Made by a program: the position numbers and the translations under genes
Part shown: positions 7,027 to 50,918 of the stretch, piece after piece
How the letters are laid out: every line of letters begins with the position of its first letter
Position numbering within the stretch: position 1 is the first letter of the stretch
Sequence record: PQ464595.1
DNA: 64,000 bases
Direction: 5' to 3' (one strand)
Notes under the pieces: model-generated
Told to the model about the DNA's origin: nothing
The model's input: only the letters and a program-made list of their open reading frames with translations
Databases searched by the model: none

Positions 7027-7055
7027 ATTATACCACATTTTTTGATGCCGTTTCA
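7027..7055 (-). promoter_or_regulatory. TGAAACG-class promoter
   Basis: TGAAACG-N16-TATAAT, with TGG immediately before the -10; same spacing at 8 other sites. Confidence 0.75.
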
Positions 7056-9907: not shown

Positions 9908-10168
9908 TCAGACGACGCATAACTTCGTCGATGAATTCTACTGCTTTTTCTGGTGGTAAATTTTCAGGCAGTGTCATACGAAACATACCTTCATCTTCAC
10001 CAGCATCAATCATCTTCTGAACGATTTCTTCAATTTGATTGGTGAAATCGTCAATTGATACAGGTTTAATACCAGCTTTCGCTTGTTCCATTTTCTGTAC
10101 TTCTTTGAAGTACGCGAAGTGCATAAACTCACGTGCCATATCAGTGTTCCTCAGTTGAGAATAAAGAC

Positions 10169-10229
10169 TAGAATCTATTTTCTGTTTTTTCGATAAAAGT
10201 GAATAGAGTGTGGTTGCTGTTAGATTCTA
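10169..10229 (-). ncRNA. CAGCAA module E1 (free hairpin)
   Basis: TAGAATCTA-ACAGCAA-(variable)-AAACAGAAAA-TAGATTCTA. Confidence 0.75.
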
Positions 10230-10235
10230 AAATTG

Positions 10236-11174: not shown

Positions 11175-11203
11175 ATTATACCACATTATTTTGTGGCGTT
11201 TCA
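11175..11203 (-). promoter_or_regulatory. TGAAACG-class promoter
   Basis: TGAAACG-N16-TATAAT. Confidence 0.75.
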
Positions 11204-11713: not shown

Positions 11714-11730
11714 AATTCACTTAAAAATAC

Positions 11731-11792
11731 TGGAATCCATTTTGATTTTTCAATTAACAGTTGATTTCATTTATGGTTGCTGCTGGATTCCA
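11731..11792 (-). ncRNA. CAGCAA module E3 (free hairpin)
   Basis: TGGAATCC-AGCAGCAACC...AAAAATCAAAAT-GGATTCCA. Confidence 0.75.
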
Positions 11793-11816
11793 AATCCGGT
11801 TTTGTTCAATTAAAGC

Positions 11817-11871
11817 TAGAATCTATTTTTGTTTTCTATATCCGAGAAGTTTTAATTGCTGGTAGATTCTA
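11817..11871 (-). ncRNA. CAGCAA module E4 (free hairpin)
   Basis: TAGAATCTA-CCAGCAA...AAAACAAAAA-TAGATTCTA. Confidence 0.75.
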
Positions 11872-11995: not shown

Positions 11996-12110
11996 TGGAA
12001 TTTATTTCGTTTTAGGCGGCTGCTCTCCCAACTGAGCTACAGTACTAGTACTGACAGGACTCGAACCTGCGACATGCTGCGTGATAGAAGTTAGTTGCTG
12101 TTAAATTCCA
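11996..12110 (-). ncRNA. CAGCAA module E5 carrying a circularly permuted tRNA domain
   Basis: Order: stem, ACAGCAA, anticodon 3' half, T arm (GCAGG TTCGAGT CCTGT), closed acceptor CAGTACT-AGTACTG, D arm (GCTC AGTTGGGA GAGC), stem. Confidence 0.8.
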
Positions 12111-12392
12111 AATTTTGTTTTAAAGATACGGATTATAGTTCGGATCACTAAAAATATTGTACTCTTTATGTTTACCATCCACAATAGTGTAGAAAGTAAA
12201 GTTCACAGAGTTATATGATTTACGGTCATTTTCTAAGTATATTGAAGTACTAGAACCGCCGATATTCACACGACTCACAACATAATAATGATCAGAATCT
12301 AACGCTAATGCGTTTATTCTATCACTTTCGTAACCAGCTTTAAGCTCAGTTACTTTAGCATATAAAATATCCATATCTTTCCTAATTAATAC

Positions 12393-12529
12393 AAGAATTC
12401 ATCGTTTATTGGATAGCCGTGTCTACCTATTTCACCATCACTATTCAGTACTGACATAGTTCGTAGGACTCGAACCTACACGCCATAAGGCCGCTATTTG
12501 GGTTAACATTTAGTTGCTGTTGAATTCTT
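12393..12529 (-). ncRNA. CAGCAA module E6 carrying a circularly permuted class-II (Leu-like) tRNA domain
   Basis: Variable arm, T arm GTAGG TTCGAGT CCTAC, acceptor closed by a TCAGTACTGA hairpin, D arm GTG AAATAGGTAGA CAC, GCTAT/ATAGC stem. Confidence 0.78.
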
Positions 12530-12541
12530 TAATTTACTACT

Positions 12542-13560: not shown

Positions 13561-13578
13561 TATCTCTCAATTAAATGC

Positions 13579-13636
13579 TGGAATCCACAAGGTCAAAGTA
13601 AAAGTTTGATTTTTGTGTGGTTGCTGGAGGATTCCA
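13579..13636 (-). ncRNA. CAGCAA module E7 (free hairpin)
   Basis: TGGAATCC-TCCAGCAACCACAC...GGATTCCA. Confidence 0.75.
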
Positions 13637-13975: not shown

Positions 13976-14152
13976 TTTTAATATATTCCAAGTATTTATC
14001 ATTTAATACTTTATGTCTATAGCCACCCTTCTTTCTCAAGGACTTGATATAAAAGGTAGCTTTAGGATCTAATCCTTTGCTAATAAGATAATCTTTTTCA
14101 AATTCATCTTGTAGTTTAGACATGTATGACTCACTTGAGTAAATTAAAAAGC

Positions 14153-14212
14153 TAGAATCTATAATCTTTGTTTTCACCAATTGAATAAGAGTATGTTTGC
14201 TGTTAGATTCTA
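14153..14212 (-). ncRNA. CAGCAA module E8 (free hairpin)
   Basis: TAGAATCTA-ACAGCAA-ACATAC...AAAACAAAGATTA-TAGATTCTA. Confidence 0.75.
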
Positions 14213-14336
14213 TGCGAGAAAGGTTGGACTCGAACCAACGACCAGGCCATTAAAAGTGGATGAAGTATGGTTGCTGAGAAATTACATTACAGTAATTTTT
14301 GGGTTCTACCTGCTCTACCAACTGAGCTACTTTCTC
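14213..14336 (-). tRNA. tRNA-Lys(TTT) interrupted by a 49-nt CAGCAA insert (14260-14308) in the anticodon stem
   Basis: Deleting the insert gives the perfect arm GGCCA-CTTTTAA-TGGCC; acceptor, D and T arms are intact. Confidence 0.75.
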
Positions 14337-14524: not shown

Positions 14525-14617
14525 TGGAGGAAGATGTGGGATTCGAACCCACGGAGGGCTATTAACCCCCGCCTGATTTCAAGTCAGGTACAATAAGCCA
14601 AACTCTGCCAATCTTCC
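14525..14617 (-). tRNA. tRNA-Ser(TGA)
   Basis: Class II cloverleaf, loop CTTGAAA, CCA; discriminator U. Confidence 0.93.
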
Positions 14618-14647
14618 AAAAAAGTACTTCACAGTACTTTGTACGCT

Positions 14648-14802
14648 GGATTCTCATTAATTGAGCAACTATCTAGCACGGCTCAATATAACTAATTACT
14701 ATCTCCCTAGTTACCAGGTGGACACGAAGGGAGTTTTACGTCCGAGTATCCAATCTCATTTATGATTGATTTTTAAGATTTTATGTGTTGCTGTCAGAAT
14801 CC
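14648..14802 (-). ncRNA. CAGCAA module E10 with a ~135-nt structured payload
   Basis: GGATTCT-GACAGCAA...AGAATCC; inner CTCCCT/AGGGAG, GGAC/GTCC (pseudoknot), ATTGAGC/GCTCAAT. Confidence 0.65.
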
Positions 14803-14831
14803 GAGTGCTAATTCGGTTTTAATTAAAAGAC

Positions 14832-14937
14832 AAGAATCGTTGTTTTCTGTCCCCACAACCAGTGGTAAATCGGAATTGAACCGAAGGTGTTTTTCGCCAA
14901 ATGAAATATAAAGAGTTATGTTTGCTGGACGATTCTT
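14832..14937 (-). ncRNA. CAGCAA module E11 with T arm and closed acceptor-like hairpin
   Basis: AAGAATCGT-CCAGCAA...TCGG TTCAATT CCGA...CCAC/GTGG...AAAACA-ACGATTCTT. Confidence 0.7.
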
Positions 14938-14938
14938 T

Positions 14939-15012
14939 TAGCGTTCCCAACGGGGTTCGAACCCGTGTTGCCTGAGTGAAAGTCAGGTATCCTACCGCTA
15001 GATGATGGGAAC
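14939..15012 (-). tRNA. tRNA-Glu(TTC)
   Basis: Cloverleaf, loop CTTTCAC, G73; 3' CTA. Confidence 0.95.
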
Positions 15013-15195
15013 AATTTTTATTCAGATTCTTTCAATGACCATTCTGTACTTTTATCGGTACTTTTGGTTACTTCAAAACCTAATTCGGACATTACTTCAG
15101 GAAGGTTATTGTTATCAATACCACTAAGGATATGACGAACGATTACCATGTTTTCTTCAGATGATGCCATTTTACTATCCTTTGTTGAAGGAACT

Positions 15196-15311
15196 GAAAT
15201 CTTTGTTTTTCTGGCCCCAAGCACAGCCTACATAGCAACGTGGCTGCTGCGGATTCGAACCGCACCGTTTTTTTCGCATAAAAAATATTGTTTTGTTTGC
15301 TGTAAGATTTC
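15196..15311 (-). ncRNA. CAGCAA module E12 with T arm, closed acceptor and mini D arm
   Basis: GAAATCTT-ACAGCAA...TGCGG TTCGAAT CCGCA-GCAGCC/GGCTGT-GC TTGGG GC-AAAAACA-AAGATTTC. Confidence 0.72.
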
Positions 15312-15328
15312 GTGTTGCTAATACTTTT

Positions 15329-15357
15329 ATTATACCACAAATATTTGATTCGTTTCA
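15329..15357 (-). promoter_or_regulatory. TGAAACG-class promoter
   Basis: TGAAACG-N16-TATAAT, directly upstream of E12. Confidence 0.75.
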
Positions 15358-15378
15358 AATATTTCTTAATTAAATTCA

Positions 15379-15500
15379 GGAATCTCGTTTTATCCAGCAC
15401 CAAGCTCCCACTATTTGAATAAGGCAGATGTTCGTGGGTGGGGAATTGAACCCCGTCGTTTTGTTTTCATCAAAAGGTTTAATTTTTGCTGTAAGATTCC
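15379..15500 (-). ncRNA. CAGCAA module E13 with T arm, closed acceptor and mini D arm
   Basis: GGAATCT-TACAGCAA...GGGG TTCAATT CCCC-CCCAC/GTGGG-AGC TTGGT GCT-AAAACG-AGATTCC. Confidence 0.72.
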
Positions 15501-15517
15501 GCTGCCTTATGTACTAC

Positions 15518-15546
15518 ATTATACCAGATTTTTTTGAGTCGTTTCA
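15518..15546 (-). promoter_or_regulatory. TGAAACG-class promoter
   Basis: TGAAACG-N16-TATAAT, directly upstream of E13. Confidence 0.75.
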
Positions 15547-15572
15547 AATTTTTCTGTATAATTTTCAGAAAC

Positions 15573-16259
15573 TTAATCACTTACATAAGTTTCTAATTTG
15601 TTCCTGAACTGTACACCATCTTGGCTGTACTGTTGTGTTAATTTCGGGTTTTGCGTGTTGTTCACATCGTTGATCATGATTGGTACAAAGGACACACGAA
15701 TGAACGTGCGTACCTGACCAGTACTAACCACAGGACGACGATGAAGAATGTACGGGTCTAAACAGTACACGACATTCTCTTTACAACGTTTTACTTCAGA
15801 CGTGATGTTCTGTTCCAGGAAATGGTTCACGTTATGTTTCAGTGGGTCAAAATCATCAGGAAACTTCACAGAAACATTGGTGTATTCTGTCGGAATACGA
15901 TTAGTCCAAATGTAGTTCTGTTCAGGAACGTGAGCGACCTTAGTACTGAAACCGTCAACATGCCATTCGTCATCAGTTACAGATTTAACAACACCGTGTC
16001 GTACAGTAATGTAGCAGTACTGCTTGTCACCGTCAACAGCATTTTTCTGATGATTAAGCGACTCTATCAATACTGGAGATAACCAACGGAGTTCATCTGG
16101 TATTAACAGATTCTCACCGTCAGCACATACACACATACGCAGAATGTATTGTTCATCGAAAGGACATACTACATCAACTTTCGATAACTCAATTGGTTCA
16201 ACATTGTTTTCAAATTCACTTACAGAAACATTACGCTTTGCTCGTTCAATGATACCCAT
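15573..16259 (-). CDS. putative 2OG-Fe(II) oxygenase-like protein
   Basis: WHVDG (HxD) ... ILHRRP (H) ... RTFIRVSF (R) spacing typical of the double-stranded beta-helix fold. Confidence 0.55.
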   Translation of the reverse strand: MGIIERAKRNVSVSEFENNVEPIELSKVDVVCPFDEQYILRMCVCADGENLLIPDELRWLSPVLIESLNHQKNAVDGDKQYCYITVRHGVVKSVTDDEWHVDGFSTKVAHVPEQNYIWTNRIPTEYTNVSVKFPDDFDPLKHNVNHFLEQNITSEVKRCKENVVYCLDPYILHRRPVVSTGQVRTFIRVSFVPIMINDVNNTQNPKLTQQYSQDGVQFRNKLETYVSD

Positions 16260-29043: not shown

Positions 29044-29380
29044 GCCGCATAGGGGATTCGAACCCCTTCAGATTATACGCGGAACCACCCCGCTCAGGTA
29101 TATCTACCCGTAATCCTATCACAATACCATTATTGATACTAGTACTTTCTTGTGCACCTTCCAGTACTTTCTCTCAGTGATTGATAAGGAGTCGAACCCT
29201 ACCACGGCATATTCTCAATTAATATATGGTTGGGGGTCGTGACCTTCTCAGAGTTACCTCTCCAGCCCCATCCCATTCTTGCCACGTCAAGATATGAGTA
29301 CTCTCATATTAGAGCTTATTTTACCACGATTAACTGGCTACATTCGAGGATAGCAATTCCCCTAGCTACTAATCAAGTAG
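29044..29380 (-). ncRNA. candidate large structured RNA(s) ending in tRNA T arms
   Basis: T arms TAGGG TTCGACT CCTTA and AGGGG TTCGAAT CCCCT; hairpins ATATGAG/CTCATAT, TCTTG/CAAGA, AGAG GTAA CTCT, GGTA/TACC, GCGG/CCGC; no ORF. Confidence 0.55.
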
Positions 29381-30607: not shown

Positions 30608-30718
30608 GGTGCTAAGAACAGGATTCGAACCTGTAAGGAAACCTCGCGGTACTTCCCACGTCCTATTGTCGCTTTCGCTATCGTCAGACGCTACGTTTAC
30701 CAATTCCGTCATCTCAGC
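30608..30718 (-). ncRNA. class-II tRNA scaffold with a 24-nt expanded anticodon loop
   Basis: GCTGAGA/TCTTAGC, Leu-like D arm, GCGTC/GACGT stem, loop contains GC-GAAA-GC, long variable hairpin, T arm. Confidence 0.7.
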
Positions 30719-39243: not shown

Positions 39244-39272
39244 ATTATAGCACAAAAAAGCGTTCCGTTTCA
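39244..39272 (-). promoter_or_regulatory. TGAAACG-class promoter
   Basis: TGAAACG-N16-TATAAT. Confidence 0.75.
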
Positions 39273-44854: not shown

Positions 44855-44883
44855 ATTATACCACAAAATTTTGAACCGTTTCA
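44855..44883 (-). promoter_or_regulatory. TGAAACG-class promoter
   Basis: TGAAACG-N16-TATAAT. Confidence 0.75.
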
Positions 44884-45490
44884 AAATTCTTCACTTAATA
44901 GTGGACATTTTTCAACATCCACATTTGAACTTATTCTACCGCAGGACGAGCTTTTTCAACTTCGTCAAAGAATTCGTTATTCATTGCGATTAAGTCAGCG
45001 TACCAGAAAATACCAGTTTCACCAGGAGTGATAGGTAAATCATTTACAGCAGCGAACAATAGTTCAGCTTTAGTAATATCACAACGAGTCCAAGTACCAT
45101 TAGTAAAACCAGTTAGGATAGTAAACTCTCCACGGCAATCTTCAGCAAGTTTCTCAGTCAAATATACAGTATTAACCATGTCATCCTGATAGGATCGAAG
45201 CATGATATTAGTACTGTTAATGTAAGACATGAGATTGAAGTTCGCTTCAGTTGTTACTAAGAAACGTTCAAATCCTTCAGACTTATCTAGTTTGAAATCT
45301 AGAGTAAATCCAAGTTTTTGGACTACTTTCTCCATGAGATATAGTTCATAACCATGATAAATGGTTGGATCGCCATCACGAGCAAATACACGGATAGCTA
45401 AGTAATCGTCTTCAATTACAGTTTCGAAATTATCGTTATCAGCTAAAAACGCTTCAATGCGTTTGATAACATCTTGTACTTCTTGTAACA

Positions 45491-50889: not shown

Positions 50890-50918
50890 ATTATAGCACA
50901 ACTTTTTTTATCGTTTCA
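50890..50918 (-). promoter_or_regulatory. TGAAACG-class promoter
   Basis: TGAAACG-N16-TATAAT. Confidence 0.75.

What the first reader, a model, noticed from the sequence alone, without database searches (positions are those of the whole stretch)
14832..15500. Three minimal elbow mimics (E11-E13), two with dedicated promoters
Seen: each has an intact T arm and a closed acceptor-like hairpin. E12 and E13 also have a GC-UUGG(G/U)-GC mini D arm, and each sits just downstream of its own TGAAACG promoter. Inference: independently expressed, selected small RNAs, not tRNA pseudogenes.
Basis: partly seen in the sequence, partly recalled or inferred. Interest (0 to 1): 0.65.

Follow-up and report, generated by a model that had tools for sequence, protein, structure and literature searches.

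The report
Handle-mounted minimal tRNA mimics in phage
Three small conserved RNA genes in the tRNA region of a giant Erwinia phage fold like back-to-front tRNAs without an anticodon, on a shared RNA "handle". That handle probably docks them onto a phage protein of unknown function, which would make this an undescribed viral counterpart of bacterial Y RNAs.

Summary
On the minus strand of Erwinia phage Kaldavass, E11 (14831-14939), E12 (15194-15320) and E13 (15377-15510) each carry a canonical T arm and a hairpin with a UGG loop. E12 and E13 follow strong TGAAACG-type promoters.

The elements are larger than described. Each is a 109-134 nt circularly permuted, anticodon-less cloverleaf: closing stem with an ACAGCAA box, a U/A hairpin, the T arm, a loop-closed acceptor-like stem and a mini D arm. 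In E12 and E13 the 5' leader also pairs with the acceptor-hairpin loop.

- **Selection:** orthologues in about ten Mimasvirus, Eneladusvirus and uncultivated genomes keep every helix through compensatory changes. They are better conserved than neighbouring genes, so they are not pseudogenes.
- **Family membership:** they do not match Rfam tRNA or YrlA, and none of six phage genomes encodes a TROVE/Ro60 protein.
- **Candidate partner:** all six handle-bearing genomes encode a DUF2828 plus vWA-like protein; three sister phages lack both. That gene's own leader carries a handle-like hairpin, and in the distant phage KVP40 a true UUACAGCAA handle covers its start codon.
- **Reading:** Y-RNA-like adaptors that display a tRNA elbow.
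- **Not shown:** expression and protein binding.

This scan had already noted the handle family on other phage DNA.

The parts
15518..15547 (-). Promoter P1 upstream of E13 (TTGAAACG -35 region, TGG-TATAAT extended -10)
   Evidence: One search gives 11 of 12 matches plus the TG extension. It belongs to a class of 19 genome copies, all on the minus strand, with none in the reversed-pattern control. It is conserved in Mimasvirus and Eneladusvirus. The motif was published as a predicted promoter for phages CBB and GAP32 (PMC5259590).
15377..15510 (-). E13 RNA. Leader strand 15502-15510; closing stem 15494-15500 with 15379-15385; box 15484-15493; U/A hairpin 15463-15476; T arm 15439-15455; acceptor-like hairpin 15407-15438, whose loop 15419-15427 pairs with the leader; mini D arm 15397-15405.
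   Evidence: The MFE fold recovers the closing stem, T arm, hairpin and mini D arm. Covariation over 8 orthologues: T stem GC/AU; leader-loop helix AU/GC/UA. The 9-bp leader-loop complementarity is reached by only 16 of 20000 loop shuffles. The E12-trained model scores it at 57-72 bits.
15329..15358 (-). Promoter P2 upstream of E12 (same class as P1)
   Evidence: In Eneladusvirus and two uncultivated relatives a further tRNA-like gene lies between P2 and E12.
15194..15320 (-). E12 RNA. Leader strand 15314-15320; closing stem 15304-15311 with 15196-15203; box 15295-15303; U/A hairpin 15269-15285; T arm 15248-15264; 6-7 bp acceptor-like hairpin 15223-15247, whose loop 15233-15239 pairs with the leader; mini D arm 15214-15222.
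   Evidence: Over 10 orthologues: T stem CG/GC/UA, acceptor-like stem GC/AU/UA and AU/GU, mini D arm CG/UG/AU. The covariation score exceeds all 500 shuffles and all slid controls. RNAalifold predicts the same helices on its own.
15018..15170 (-). orf50, a real small gene between E12 and tRNA-Glu. It is context, not part of the RNAs.
   Evidence: phrog_25173, E 6e-23. It is conserved as protein in four phages and absent in fHe-Yen9-03, where E12 abuts tRNA-Glu.
14941..15012 (-). tRNA-Glu(UUC), co-transcribed. Its 3' end lies 3 nt before the E11 closing stem.
14831..14939 (-). E11 RNA. Closing stem 14930-14937 with 14832-14839; box 14920-14929; U/A hairpin 14892-14906; T arm 14869-14885; D-like hairpin with a UGGUU loop 14853-14865.
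   Evidence: RNAalifold over 11 orthologues: 9 of 19 predicted pairs carry compensatory changes, in the closing stem (AU/GC, AU/UA), the T stem (UA/GC/AU, CG/GC, GC/AU) and the hairpin (CG/UA, AU/GC). The E12 model scores it at 41-47 bits.

Best explanation
E11, E12 and E13 are genes for stable structured non-coding RNAs.

**Fold.** Each forms a circularly permuted, anticodon-less, class-II-like cloverleaf.
- A closing stem sits where the anticodon stem would be. It is flanked by a conserved NNACAGCAA box on one side and an A-rich strand on the other; together these form the "handle".
- Then come a U/A hairpin in the variable-arm position, a canonical T arm, a loop-closed acceptor-like stem stacked on the T arm, and a 2-3 bp D hairpin.
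- The UGG loop of the D hairpin can dock on the T loop to form a tRNA elbow.
- In E12 and E13 the first nucleotides of the transcript pair with the loop of the acceptor-like hairpin, so both RNA ends are buried in helices.

**Expression (inferred).** They are made from the TGAAACG promoter class that also drives the phage's tRNA genes. They lie in one transcription unit with tRNA-Glu and tRNA-Ser and would be released by tRNA-type processing.

**Working mechanism (inferred).** They act in trans as adaptor RNAs. The handle binds the phage's DUF2828 plus vWA-like protein. The tRNA top-half mimic engages a factor that reads the tRNA elbow or the acceptor-T minihelix. This is the logic of bacterial YrlA/Ro60 particles, built from a different handle and a non-TROVE protein.

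**Shown:** the structures, their conservation, the promoter class, and the co-occurrence with DUF2828.
**Inferred:** transcription, processing, protein binding and the target.
For: - **Structure and selection:**. G.U pairs make the fold specific to the minus strand. E13 and E12 are more conserved than neighbouring genes.
- **Paralogy:** a model trained only on E12 finds E13 (57-72 bits), E11 (41-47 bits) and about 58-nt empty handles (about 30-35 bits) in all six related genomes, all in the tRNA region.
- **One handle in other settings:** it also occurs empty in front of ORFs and, permuted, inside interrupted tRNA genes.
- **Promoter class shared with tRNA genes:**; published motif in PMC5259590.
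- **Architecture:** the order stem, V, T, closed acceptor stem, D, stem equals that of YrlA (PMC4201824; bioRxiv 10.1101/312249).
- **Partner candidate:**
  - DUF2828 plus DUF7788, with a weak vWA match, is present in 6 of 6 handle-bearing genomes and absent from RaK2, K64-1 and 121Q, which also lack the RNAs.
  - The gene lies behind a TGAAACG promoter.
  - Its leader has a conserved handle-like hairpin in Kaldavass, GAP32 and BF. In KVP40 a hairpin with the exact UUACAGCAA box encloses the gene's Shine-Dalgarno sequence and start codon.
Against: - There is no direct RNA evidence. Only short, low-depth contigs from wastewater RNA libraries cover E13 and E11, and DNA carry-over is not excluded.
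- MFE z-scores of the single sequences are weak, -0.6 to -1.35.
- The co-occurrence of DUF2828 with the handle amounts to one or two independent events in the genomes I tested. Aeromonas phage Aeh1 has DUF2828 but no handle within 1.5 kb of the gene.
- The hairpin in the Kaldavass DUF2828 leader has CAACAA, not CAGCAA.
- I could not test whether DUF2828 resembles Ro60.
- The mini D stem is only 2-3 bp and is invariant in E13, so it is untested there.
- The 3-4 nt loop left in E12 for the pseudoknot is short.
Confidence: 0.55

Rival explanations
1. Cis-acting processing or stabilising elements. The T arm plus acceptor-like minihelix recruits RNase P, RNase E or RNase Z to cut the long tRNA/mRNA transcript at defined points, or the fold protects the 5' end of the downstream RNA. 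The RNA fragments have no function of their own.
For: - No terminators separate the elements.
- E11 starts 3 nt after tRNA-Glu, and E12 lies in front of orf50.
- Empty handles sit 16-30 nt in front of ORF start codons.
- The 6-7 bp acceptor-like stem on a 5 bp T stem is the minihelix that RNase P recognises. M. smegmatis YrlA is cut in this way.
Against: - E12 is kept unchanged where orf50 is absent.
- E13 is followed only by another promoter.
- The acceptor-hairpin loop, where RNase P would cut, is tied up with the leader.
- A processing signal would not need a conserved box, a D-loop mimic and three diverged paralogues kept in every genome.
Confidence: 0.17
2. Precursors that are cut and re-ligated at the handle. 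The handle would be an intron-like signal, as suggested by its presence inside interrupted tRNA genes. Cutting and ligation would give circular or re-permuted tRNA-like molecules, as for the permuted tRNA genes of Cyanidioschyzon.
For: - The same handle interrupts the anticodon stem of at least four tRNA-shaped genes in the window.
- The related phage CBB encodes two RNA ligases (PMC5259590).
- The topology of E12 matches a permuted tRNA.
Against: - No splicing endonuclease or bulge-helix-bulge motif was identified.
- E11-E13 have no anticodon arm, so re-permutation would not yield a decoder.
- Empty handles in mRNA leaders make no sense as introns.
- No joined forms appeared in the laid contigs (weak evidence).
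Confidence: 0.12
3. Free decoys for a host enzyme or defence nuclease that reads the tRNA elbow, with no phage protein partner.
For: - The T loop is canonical (G53-C61, U54, U55, C56, A58) and there is a GG-containing D-loop mimic.
- They are expressed alongside the phage tRNA set.
- tRNA-targeting defences are common (PMC7824862).
Against: - Most known anti-phage tRNA nucleases cut anticodon loops, which these RNAs lack.
- The idea does not explain the conserved handle or its occurrence without any tRNA-like cargo.
Confidence: 0.1
4. Decaying tRNA pseudogenes, or DNA-level repeats (MITE-like elements with short inverted ends) carrying tRNA fragments as passengers.
For: - The handle is a dispersed repeat with inverted ends.
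- An HNH endonuclease gene lies nearby.
- The bodies clearly derive from tRNA.
Against: - Orthologous positions are kept across genera.
- Compensatory changes occur in five different helices, and the G.U pairs are strand-specific.
- Conservation is higher than in the coding flanks.
Confidence: 0.04

Closest known systems
YrlA, the bacterial and phage Y RNAs with a tRNA-like domain, bound by Ro60/Rsr (Rfam RF02553; PMC4201824; bioRxiv 10.1101/312249)
   Same: - RNA ends joined in a stem that serves as a protein handle.
- The order V hairpin, T arm, loop-closed acceptor-like stem, D arm, making a circularly permuted tRNA without an anticodon loop.
- A T-loop/GG elbow.
- Location next to tRNA genes.
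   Different: - No RF02553 match at E of 1 or better on E11-E13.
- No GNCGAA Ro-binding motif.
- No TROVE gene in six genomes.
- D arm shrunk to 2-3 bp and no anticodon-stem helix.
- A different handle (ACAGCAA box plus A-rich strand).
- An extra leader-loop pseudoknot.
- The candidate partner is a DUF2828 protein.
Dictyostelium Class I RNAs (Rfam RF01414; PMC7919456)
   Same: A short stem joins the 5' and 3' ends. A conserved motif containing UUACAGCAA lies directly after the 5' strand of that stem. The remainder is A/U-rich and variable. The empty phage handles are also about 58 nt long.
   Different: - E12 scores 25.4 bits against a cut-off of 41.5, and similar weak hits occur in phages without handles.
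- E11-E13 are twice as long and carry tRNA-like cargo.
- Class I RNAs are reported only in dictyostelids and bind an RRM protein.
- The likeness may be chance or convergence.
tRNA-like domain of tmRNA, including circularly permuted two-piece tmRNA
   Same: A T arm, a reduced D-loop analogue without a real D stem, no anticodon arm, and permuted gene order in some lineages.
   Different: ARAGORN finds no tmRNA here. There is no free acceptor end or CCA, no tag reading frame and no pseudoknot ring.
Stable non-tRNA RNAs of phage tRNA clusters, such as the T4 species 1 and 2 RNAs and the T5 stable RNAs (recalled from my own knowledge, not checked here)
   Same: Small stable RNAs of unknown function encoded among phage tRNA genes and processed with them.
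   Different: No sequence or structure comparison was made here. T4 lacks DUF2828.

Membership tests
tRNA (functional gene or recent pseudogene) | Match to the Rfam tRNA model RF00005 at 29 bits or more, or an ARAGORN call | tested here: not met
   Within 14600-15700 only tRNA-Glu matches, even with the E-value limit raised to 10.
tRNA (functional gene or recent pseudogene) | An anticodon arm and a free acceptor end | tested here: not met
   There is no anticodon stem-loop, and the acceptor-like stem is closed by a loop.
YrlA / bacterial Y RNA | Ends in a stem, then V, T arm, closed acceptor-like stem, D arm | tested here: met
   compared with the description in PMC4201824 and 10.1101/312249. 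E11 in Mimasvirus lacks a separate acceptor-like stem.
YrlA / bacterial Y RNA | RF02553 score at or above 69 bits | tested here: not met
   No hit on E11-E13 at E of 1 or better. The best hit in this genome is a different module at window 12019-12077, with 41.9 bits.
YrlA / bacterial Y RNA | The GNCGAA(N)G motif in the 5' strand, thought to contact Ro60 | tested here: not met
   By reading the sequence, the 5' strands read GGAAUC, GAAAUC and AAGAAUCG, each followed by the ACAGCAA box.
YrlA / bacterial Y RNA | A Ro60/TROVE gene next to the RNA or in the same genome | tested here: not met
   PF05731 was not found in six-frame searches of Kaldavass, GAP32, BF, CBB, XbC2 and fHe-Yen9-03. The control genomes gave the expected hits.
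CAGCAA-handle RNAs of phages (defined only by this scan; I found no publication) | A 6-8 bp stem joining the ends, with NNACAGCAA directly after its 5' strand and an A-rich strand before its 3' strand | tested here: met
   The closing stems covary between paralogues and orthologues: GGAAUC/GAUUCC, GAAAUC/GAUUUC, GAAUCG/CGAUUC and GGAUUCG/CGAAUCC.
CAGCAA-handle RNAs of phages (defined only by this scan; I found no publication) | A DUF2828-family protein gene in the same genome | tested here: met
   PF11443 scores above its cut-off in 6 of 6 handle-bearing genomes and is absent from 3 of 3 handle-less sister phages.
CAGCAA-handle RNAs of phages (defined only by this scan; I found no publication) | Physical binding of the handle by the DUF2828 protein | not testable with these tools
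   The evidence is only circumstantial: handle or handle-like hairpins at the translation start of the DUF2828 gene in KVP40, Kaldavass, GAP32 and BF.
Dictyostelium Class I RNA (RF01414) | Model score at or above 41.5 bits | tested here: not met
   25.4 bits on E12, with comparable weak hits in RaK2 and in control genomes.
tmRNA, standard or permuted | Detection by ARAGORN or Rfam; a tag reading frame | tested here: not met
TGAAACG-type phage promoter (Buttimer et al. 2017, PMC5259590) | TGAAACG in the -35 region with a classic TATAAT -10 | tested here: met
   Both promoters match. There are 19 copies in the genome, all on one strand. Promoter activity itself was not tested.

The most novel reading that the evidence does not exclude
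E11-E13 are cargo-bearing RNA subunits of a widespread, undescribed viral ribonucleoprotein. A DUF2828 plus vWA-like protein grips the ACAGCAA handle and regulates its own mRNA through a copy of that handle. The RNA displays a bare tRNA elbow and minihelix, which captures, blocks or redirects a host factor that reads tRNA shape, such as RNase P, a tRNA-modifying enzyme or a tRNA-directed defence nuclease. This would be a Ro60-independent Y-RNA system. The same handle motif in Dictyostelium Class I RNAs would hint at an ancient or horizontally shared RNA-protein recognition module.
Probability: 0.3. Interest if true: 0.85.

Novelty: new variant of a known kind. Interest (0 to 1): 0.72.

Why it matters
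Phage tRNA clusters have long been known to hold stable RNAs with no assigned function. These three elements are clean, evolutionarily validated examples with a defined fold, defined promoters and a testable protein partner.

If the partnership holds, it gives a function to a large family of uncharacterised proteins (DUF2828). It would extend the Y-RNA principle, a protein handle joined to a tRNA mimic, to a system without Ro60. It would also offer an explanation for the puzzling "interrupted" tRNA genes of these and other large phages.

On the practical side, the published annotation places four ORFs over these RNAs, and those calls look spurious.

Tried and rejected
- **Rfam, all families:** nothing but tRNA-Glu and chance-level hits on the region.
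- **YrlA model and TROVE search:** both negative for E11-E13, so I do not file them as Y RNAs in the strict sense.
- **Dictyostelium Class I model:** sub-threshold and not specific.
- **14-mer scan of IMG/VR with the box:** almost all of the 120 hits were chance. The useful relatives came from the flanking protein instead.
- **More distant relatives of that protein (49% identity or less):** no modules nearby.
- **Loose box pattern across T4-like phages:** uninformative.
- **Sequencing runs:** no infection transcriptome was among the runs returned. Contigs from wastewater RNA libraries cover E13 (run X19) and E11 plus part of tRNA-Glu (run X20) at depth 4-5. Contigs cannot show ends, strand or level, and chance placement is not excluded.
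- **Coding reading:** rejected. The annotated CDSs 15143-15403, 15479-15580 and 14783-14911 (plus strand) overlap the RNAs. They are not called in XbC2, GAP32 or BF, and 1, 2 and 4 nt indels between close orthologues break them.
- **Structure-based test of DUF2828 against Ro60:** I sent it to no further outside tool, so this question stays open.
- **Literature:** searches for permuted or tRNA-like RNAs in these phages and for DUF2828 found no description.

Full report
**Source and setting.** The window is Erwinia phage Kaldavass (PQ464595.1, 366.6 kb; window position = record position minus 62000), a Rak2/GAP32-type jumbo phage. All genes of the region lie on the minus strand. The window holds 26 or more tRNA genes. 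The finding lies between a 228-aa gene (15573-16259) and tRNA-Ser(UGA) (14525-14617).

**Observation.**
- Each has a T arm with a canonical seven-base T loop.
- Each has a hairpin directly behind the T arm.
- E12 and E13 also have a GC-UUGG(G/U)-GC mini hairpin.
- The T-loop pattern GGTTCRAWTCC occurs 19 times in the window against 0.11 expected, always on the minus strand. Six of those 19 lie outside the ARAGORN tRNA calls.
- Both promoters score 11 of 12 against the sigma-70 consensus and have a TG extension.

**The elements are larger than noted.** Each T arm lies inside a unit of 109-134 nt closed by a 6-8 bp stem: GGAAUC/GAUUCC in E13, GAAAUC/GAUUUC in E12, and AAGAAUCG/CGAUUCUU in E11. 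From 5' to 3' the unit reads as follows.
1. The 5' strand of the closing stem, directly followed by a conserved box (UUACAGCAA or UCCAGCAA).
2. A small U-rich/A-rich hairpin that ends in GAAAAAC.
3. The T arm.
4. A hairpin that continues the T stem without a gap.
5. The mini D hairpin.
6. An A-rich strand (AGAAAAC), then the 3' strand of the closing stem.

This is a complete cloverleaf read from the anticodon-stem position, that is, a circularly permuted tRNA without an anticodon loop. The U/A hairpin takes the place of a long variable arm.

**A shared handle.** The stem plus box recurs about 18 times on the minus strand of the window, against 3 expected. It appears in four settings.
- As "empty" elements of about 58 nt, 16-30 nt in front of ORF start codons.
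- Around full-size permuted tRNA bodies at 11997-12111 and 12394-12530.
- Around a body of about 180 nt that is not tRNA-like, at 14620-14803.
- Turned inside out as inserts of about 46 nt inside tRNA-shaped genes.

**Conservation and covariation.** I found orthologues of all three elements in the same order in these genomes.
- Xanthomonas phage XbC2
- Cronobacter phage GAP32
- Pectobacterium phage CBB
- Serratia phage BF
- Erwinia phage pEa_SNUABM_12
- Yersinia phage fHe-Yen9-03
- Two uncultivated IMG/VR genomes (L137, L138). Two more (L139, L140) keep E12 and E11 but lack E13.

The helices are kept through compensatory changes.

| Element | Sequences | Compensatory pairs seen |
|---|---|---|
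| E12 | 10 | T stem CG/GC/UA; acceptor-like stem GC/AU/UA and AU/GU; mini D stem CG/UG/AU |
| E13 | 8 | T stem GC/AU |
| E11 | 11 | 9 of 19 predicted pairs, in the closing stem, T stem and hairpin |

- For E12 the covariation score (0.189) exceeds all 500 shuffles and all slid controls. RNAalifold predicts the same helices on its own.
- The G.U pairs would be A.C mismatches on the other strand, so the selection acts on minus-strand RNA.
- Between Kaldavass and BF, E13 is 82.5% and E12 79.7% identical. The flanking 228-aa gene is 70.8%, orf50 67.7% and tRNA-Glu 58.8%.
- A covariance model built from E12 alone finds E13 at 57-72 bits and E11 at 41-47 bits in every one of six genomes, then the empty handles. 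All hits lie in the tRNA region.

These results rule out decaying pseudogenes.

**A new feature, a leader-loop helix.**
- In E13 the nine bases just 5' of the closing stem (15502-15510) are complementary to the loop of the acceptor-like hairpin (15419-15427). The terminal pair occurs as G-C, A-U and U-A in different phages.
- In E12 the leader (15314-15320) pairs with the invariant GUUGCUA of the hairpin loop (15233-15239). It changes from UAGCAAC/GUUGCUA to AAAGCAAC/GUUGCUUU in Eneladusvirus.
- Composition-preserving shuffles of the loops reach these runs in 16-34 of 20000 trials for E13 and 31-963 of 20000 for E12.
- The predicted transcription starts lie one to three bases before these strands. 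The 5' end of each RNA would therefore be buried, next to the closing stem that holds the 3' end. That design fits a stable RNA.
- The short connecting loops in E12 leave some doubt that both helices form at once.

**Promoters.**
- Kaldavass has 19 copies of TGAAAC-N16-18-TATAAT, all on the minus strand, with none for the reversed control pattern.
- Of the seven copies in the window, four lie 9-19 nt upstream of tRNA genes (Pro, Asn, Leu, Ser) and two lie upstream of E13 and E12.
- E12 and E13 are thus treated like tRNA genes. This supports expression but does not show it.
- No terminator follows either element.
- E11 has no promoter and begins 3 nt after tRNA-Glu.
- In Eneladusvirus and two uncultivated relatives another tRNA-like gene lies between the second promoter and E12.
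- orf50 between E12 and tRNA-Glu is a real gene (phrog_25173). It is missing in fHe-Yen9-03, so E12 is not simply its leader.

**Expression data.** No infection transcriptome was among the runs the look-up returned. In two wastewater metatranscriptome runs, the only contigs on the 1.2 kb apart from tRNA-Ser cover E13 with its promoter (15375-15553) and E11 with part of tRNA-Glu (14842-14992), at depth 4-5. Contigs show neither ends nor strand, and chance placement is not excluded. I count this as no more than a hint.

**Comparison with known families.**
- *tRNA and the rest of Rfam.* The Rfam tRNA model and all other Rfam families fail on the three elements.
- *YrlA.* The architecture equals that of YrlA, the tRNA-like Y RNA bound by Ro60. 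Membership fails on four counts: there is no RF02553 hit, no GNCGAA motif, a much reduced D arm, and no TROVE-domain gene in any of six genomes.
- *Dictyostelium Class I RNAs.* The box resembles the conserved motif of these RNAs, which likewise have a short end-joining stem followed by that motif. The model scores only 25.4 bits against a cut-off of 41.5, and it gives similar weak hits in unrelated phages.

**A candidate partner.** Earlier notes of this scan, made on other phage windows, linked the CAGCAA handle to a DUF2828 protein. I tested that lead here.
- *Domain make-up.* Kaldavass encodes a 504-aa protein with DUF2828 (114 bits), DUF7788 (144 bits) and a weak vWA match. It lies at record 278662-280176, outside the window.
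- *Co-occurrence.* The family is present in all six genomes that carry the RNAs. It is absent from RaK2, K64-1 and 121Q, sister jumbo phages in which the E12 model finds nothing.
- *Promoter.* The gene follows a small ORF behind one of the 19 TGAAACG promoters.
- *Leader hairpin.* Its leader holds a conserved hairpin built like a handle (a 7 bp stem, then AGU-CAACAA) directly before the Shine-Dalgarno sequence in Kaldavass, GAP32 and BF.
- *KVP40.* In this T4-like Vibrio phage of another family, which also has DUF2828, a hairpin with the exact UUACAGCAA box encloses the Shine-Dalgarno sequence and start codon of the DUF2828 gene. That arrangement is typical of an RNA-binding protein repressing its own mRNA through a copy of its target.
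- *Limits.*
  - The co-occurrence counts as only one or two independent events.
  - Aeh1 has the protein but no handle within 1.5 kb of the gene.
  - PDB sequence search found nothing, and the literature holds no functional study.

**Verdict.**
- E11-E13 are real, selected, structured RNA genes. They are minimal, permuted tRNA top halves mounted on a phage-specific handle.
- The most likely mode of action is that of an adaptor RNA: the handle binds the DUF2828 protein, and the elbow or minihelix engages a factor that reads tRNA shape.
- Cis-acting processing, cut-and-ligate maturation and free decoy action remain possible.
- I found no published description of the family.
- This scan has noted the handle before, on this window and in Vibrio, Aeromonas and Yersinia phages.

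Noticed in passing
window 14620-14803 (minus strand): A further handle module: GGAUUC plus UGACAGCAA at the 5' side, GAAUCC at the 3' side. Its body of about 180 nt is not tRNA-like. It is conserved in XbC2, CBB and BF. No Rfam match even at an E-value limit of 10.
   Followed up: partly
window 10168-10231, about 11730-11870 (two in tandem), about 13575-13635, and 14152-14214 (minus strand): Empty handles of about 58 nt: stem, ACAGCAA box, U/A hairpin, stem. They lie 16-30 nt in front of ORF start codons, including the HNH endonuclease gene. The 3' strand is followed by (A/U)G, often with UUUAAUU close behind.
   Followed up: partly
window 7027-7055, 11175-11203, 39244-39272, 50890-50918: TGAAACG-type promoters 9-19 nt upstream of tRNA-Pro, tRNA-Asn, tRNA-Leu and tRNA-Ser. 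The whole genome has 19 such promoters, all on one strand.
   Followed up: yes
window 44855-44884 and downstream: A seventh TGAAACG promoter, followed by a 12-codon reading frame (MKEIERIVENQI) rather than by a tRNA or a handle RNA.
   Followed up: no
window 15143-15403 (-), 15479-15580 (-), 14783-14911 (+), 14661-14765 (+): Annotated hypothetical CDSs that overlap E11-E13 and the neighbouring module. They are not called in related genomes, and the ones over E12 are broken by 1-4 nt indels between orthologues. They are probably spurious gene calls.
   Followed up: partly
L005:780-950 (Serratia phage BF), also L006, L139 and L140: An extra gene of about 130 nt with a T arm lies between the second promoter and E12 in Eneladusvirus and two uncultivated relatives. 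It is absent in Kaldavass.
   Followed up: no
window 29051-29067, 29185-29201, 30618-30634 (minus strand): Three more canonical T arms outside the ARAGORN tRNA calls, with no CAGCAA box nearby. The record annotates a 109-nt tRNA-Arg over the third (window 30610-30718); I did not look at the other two.
   Followed up: no
record PQ464595.1 278662-280573 (outside the window); L174:2273-2312 in KVP40: The DUF2828 plus vWA-like gene lies behind a TGAAACG promoter, with a handle-like hairpin in its leader. In KVP40 a true UUACAGCAA handle covers the gene's ribosome-binding site and start codon, which suggests autoregulation.
   Followed up: partly
window 15264-15308 (minus strand): A sub-threshold match of the E12 box region to the Dictyostelium Class I RNA model (25.4 bits, cut-off 41.5). 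The two share the motif CUUACAGCAA next to an end-joining stem.
   Followed up: yes
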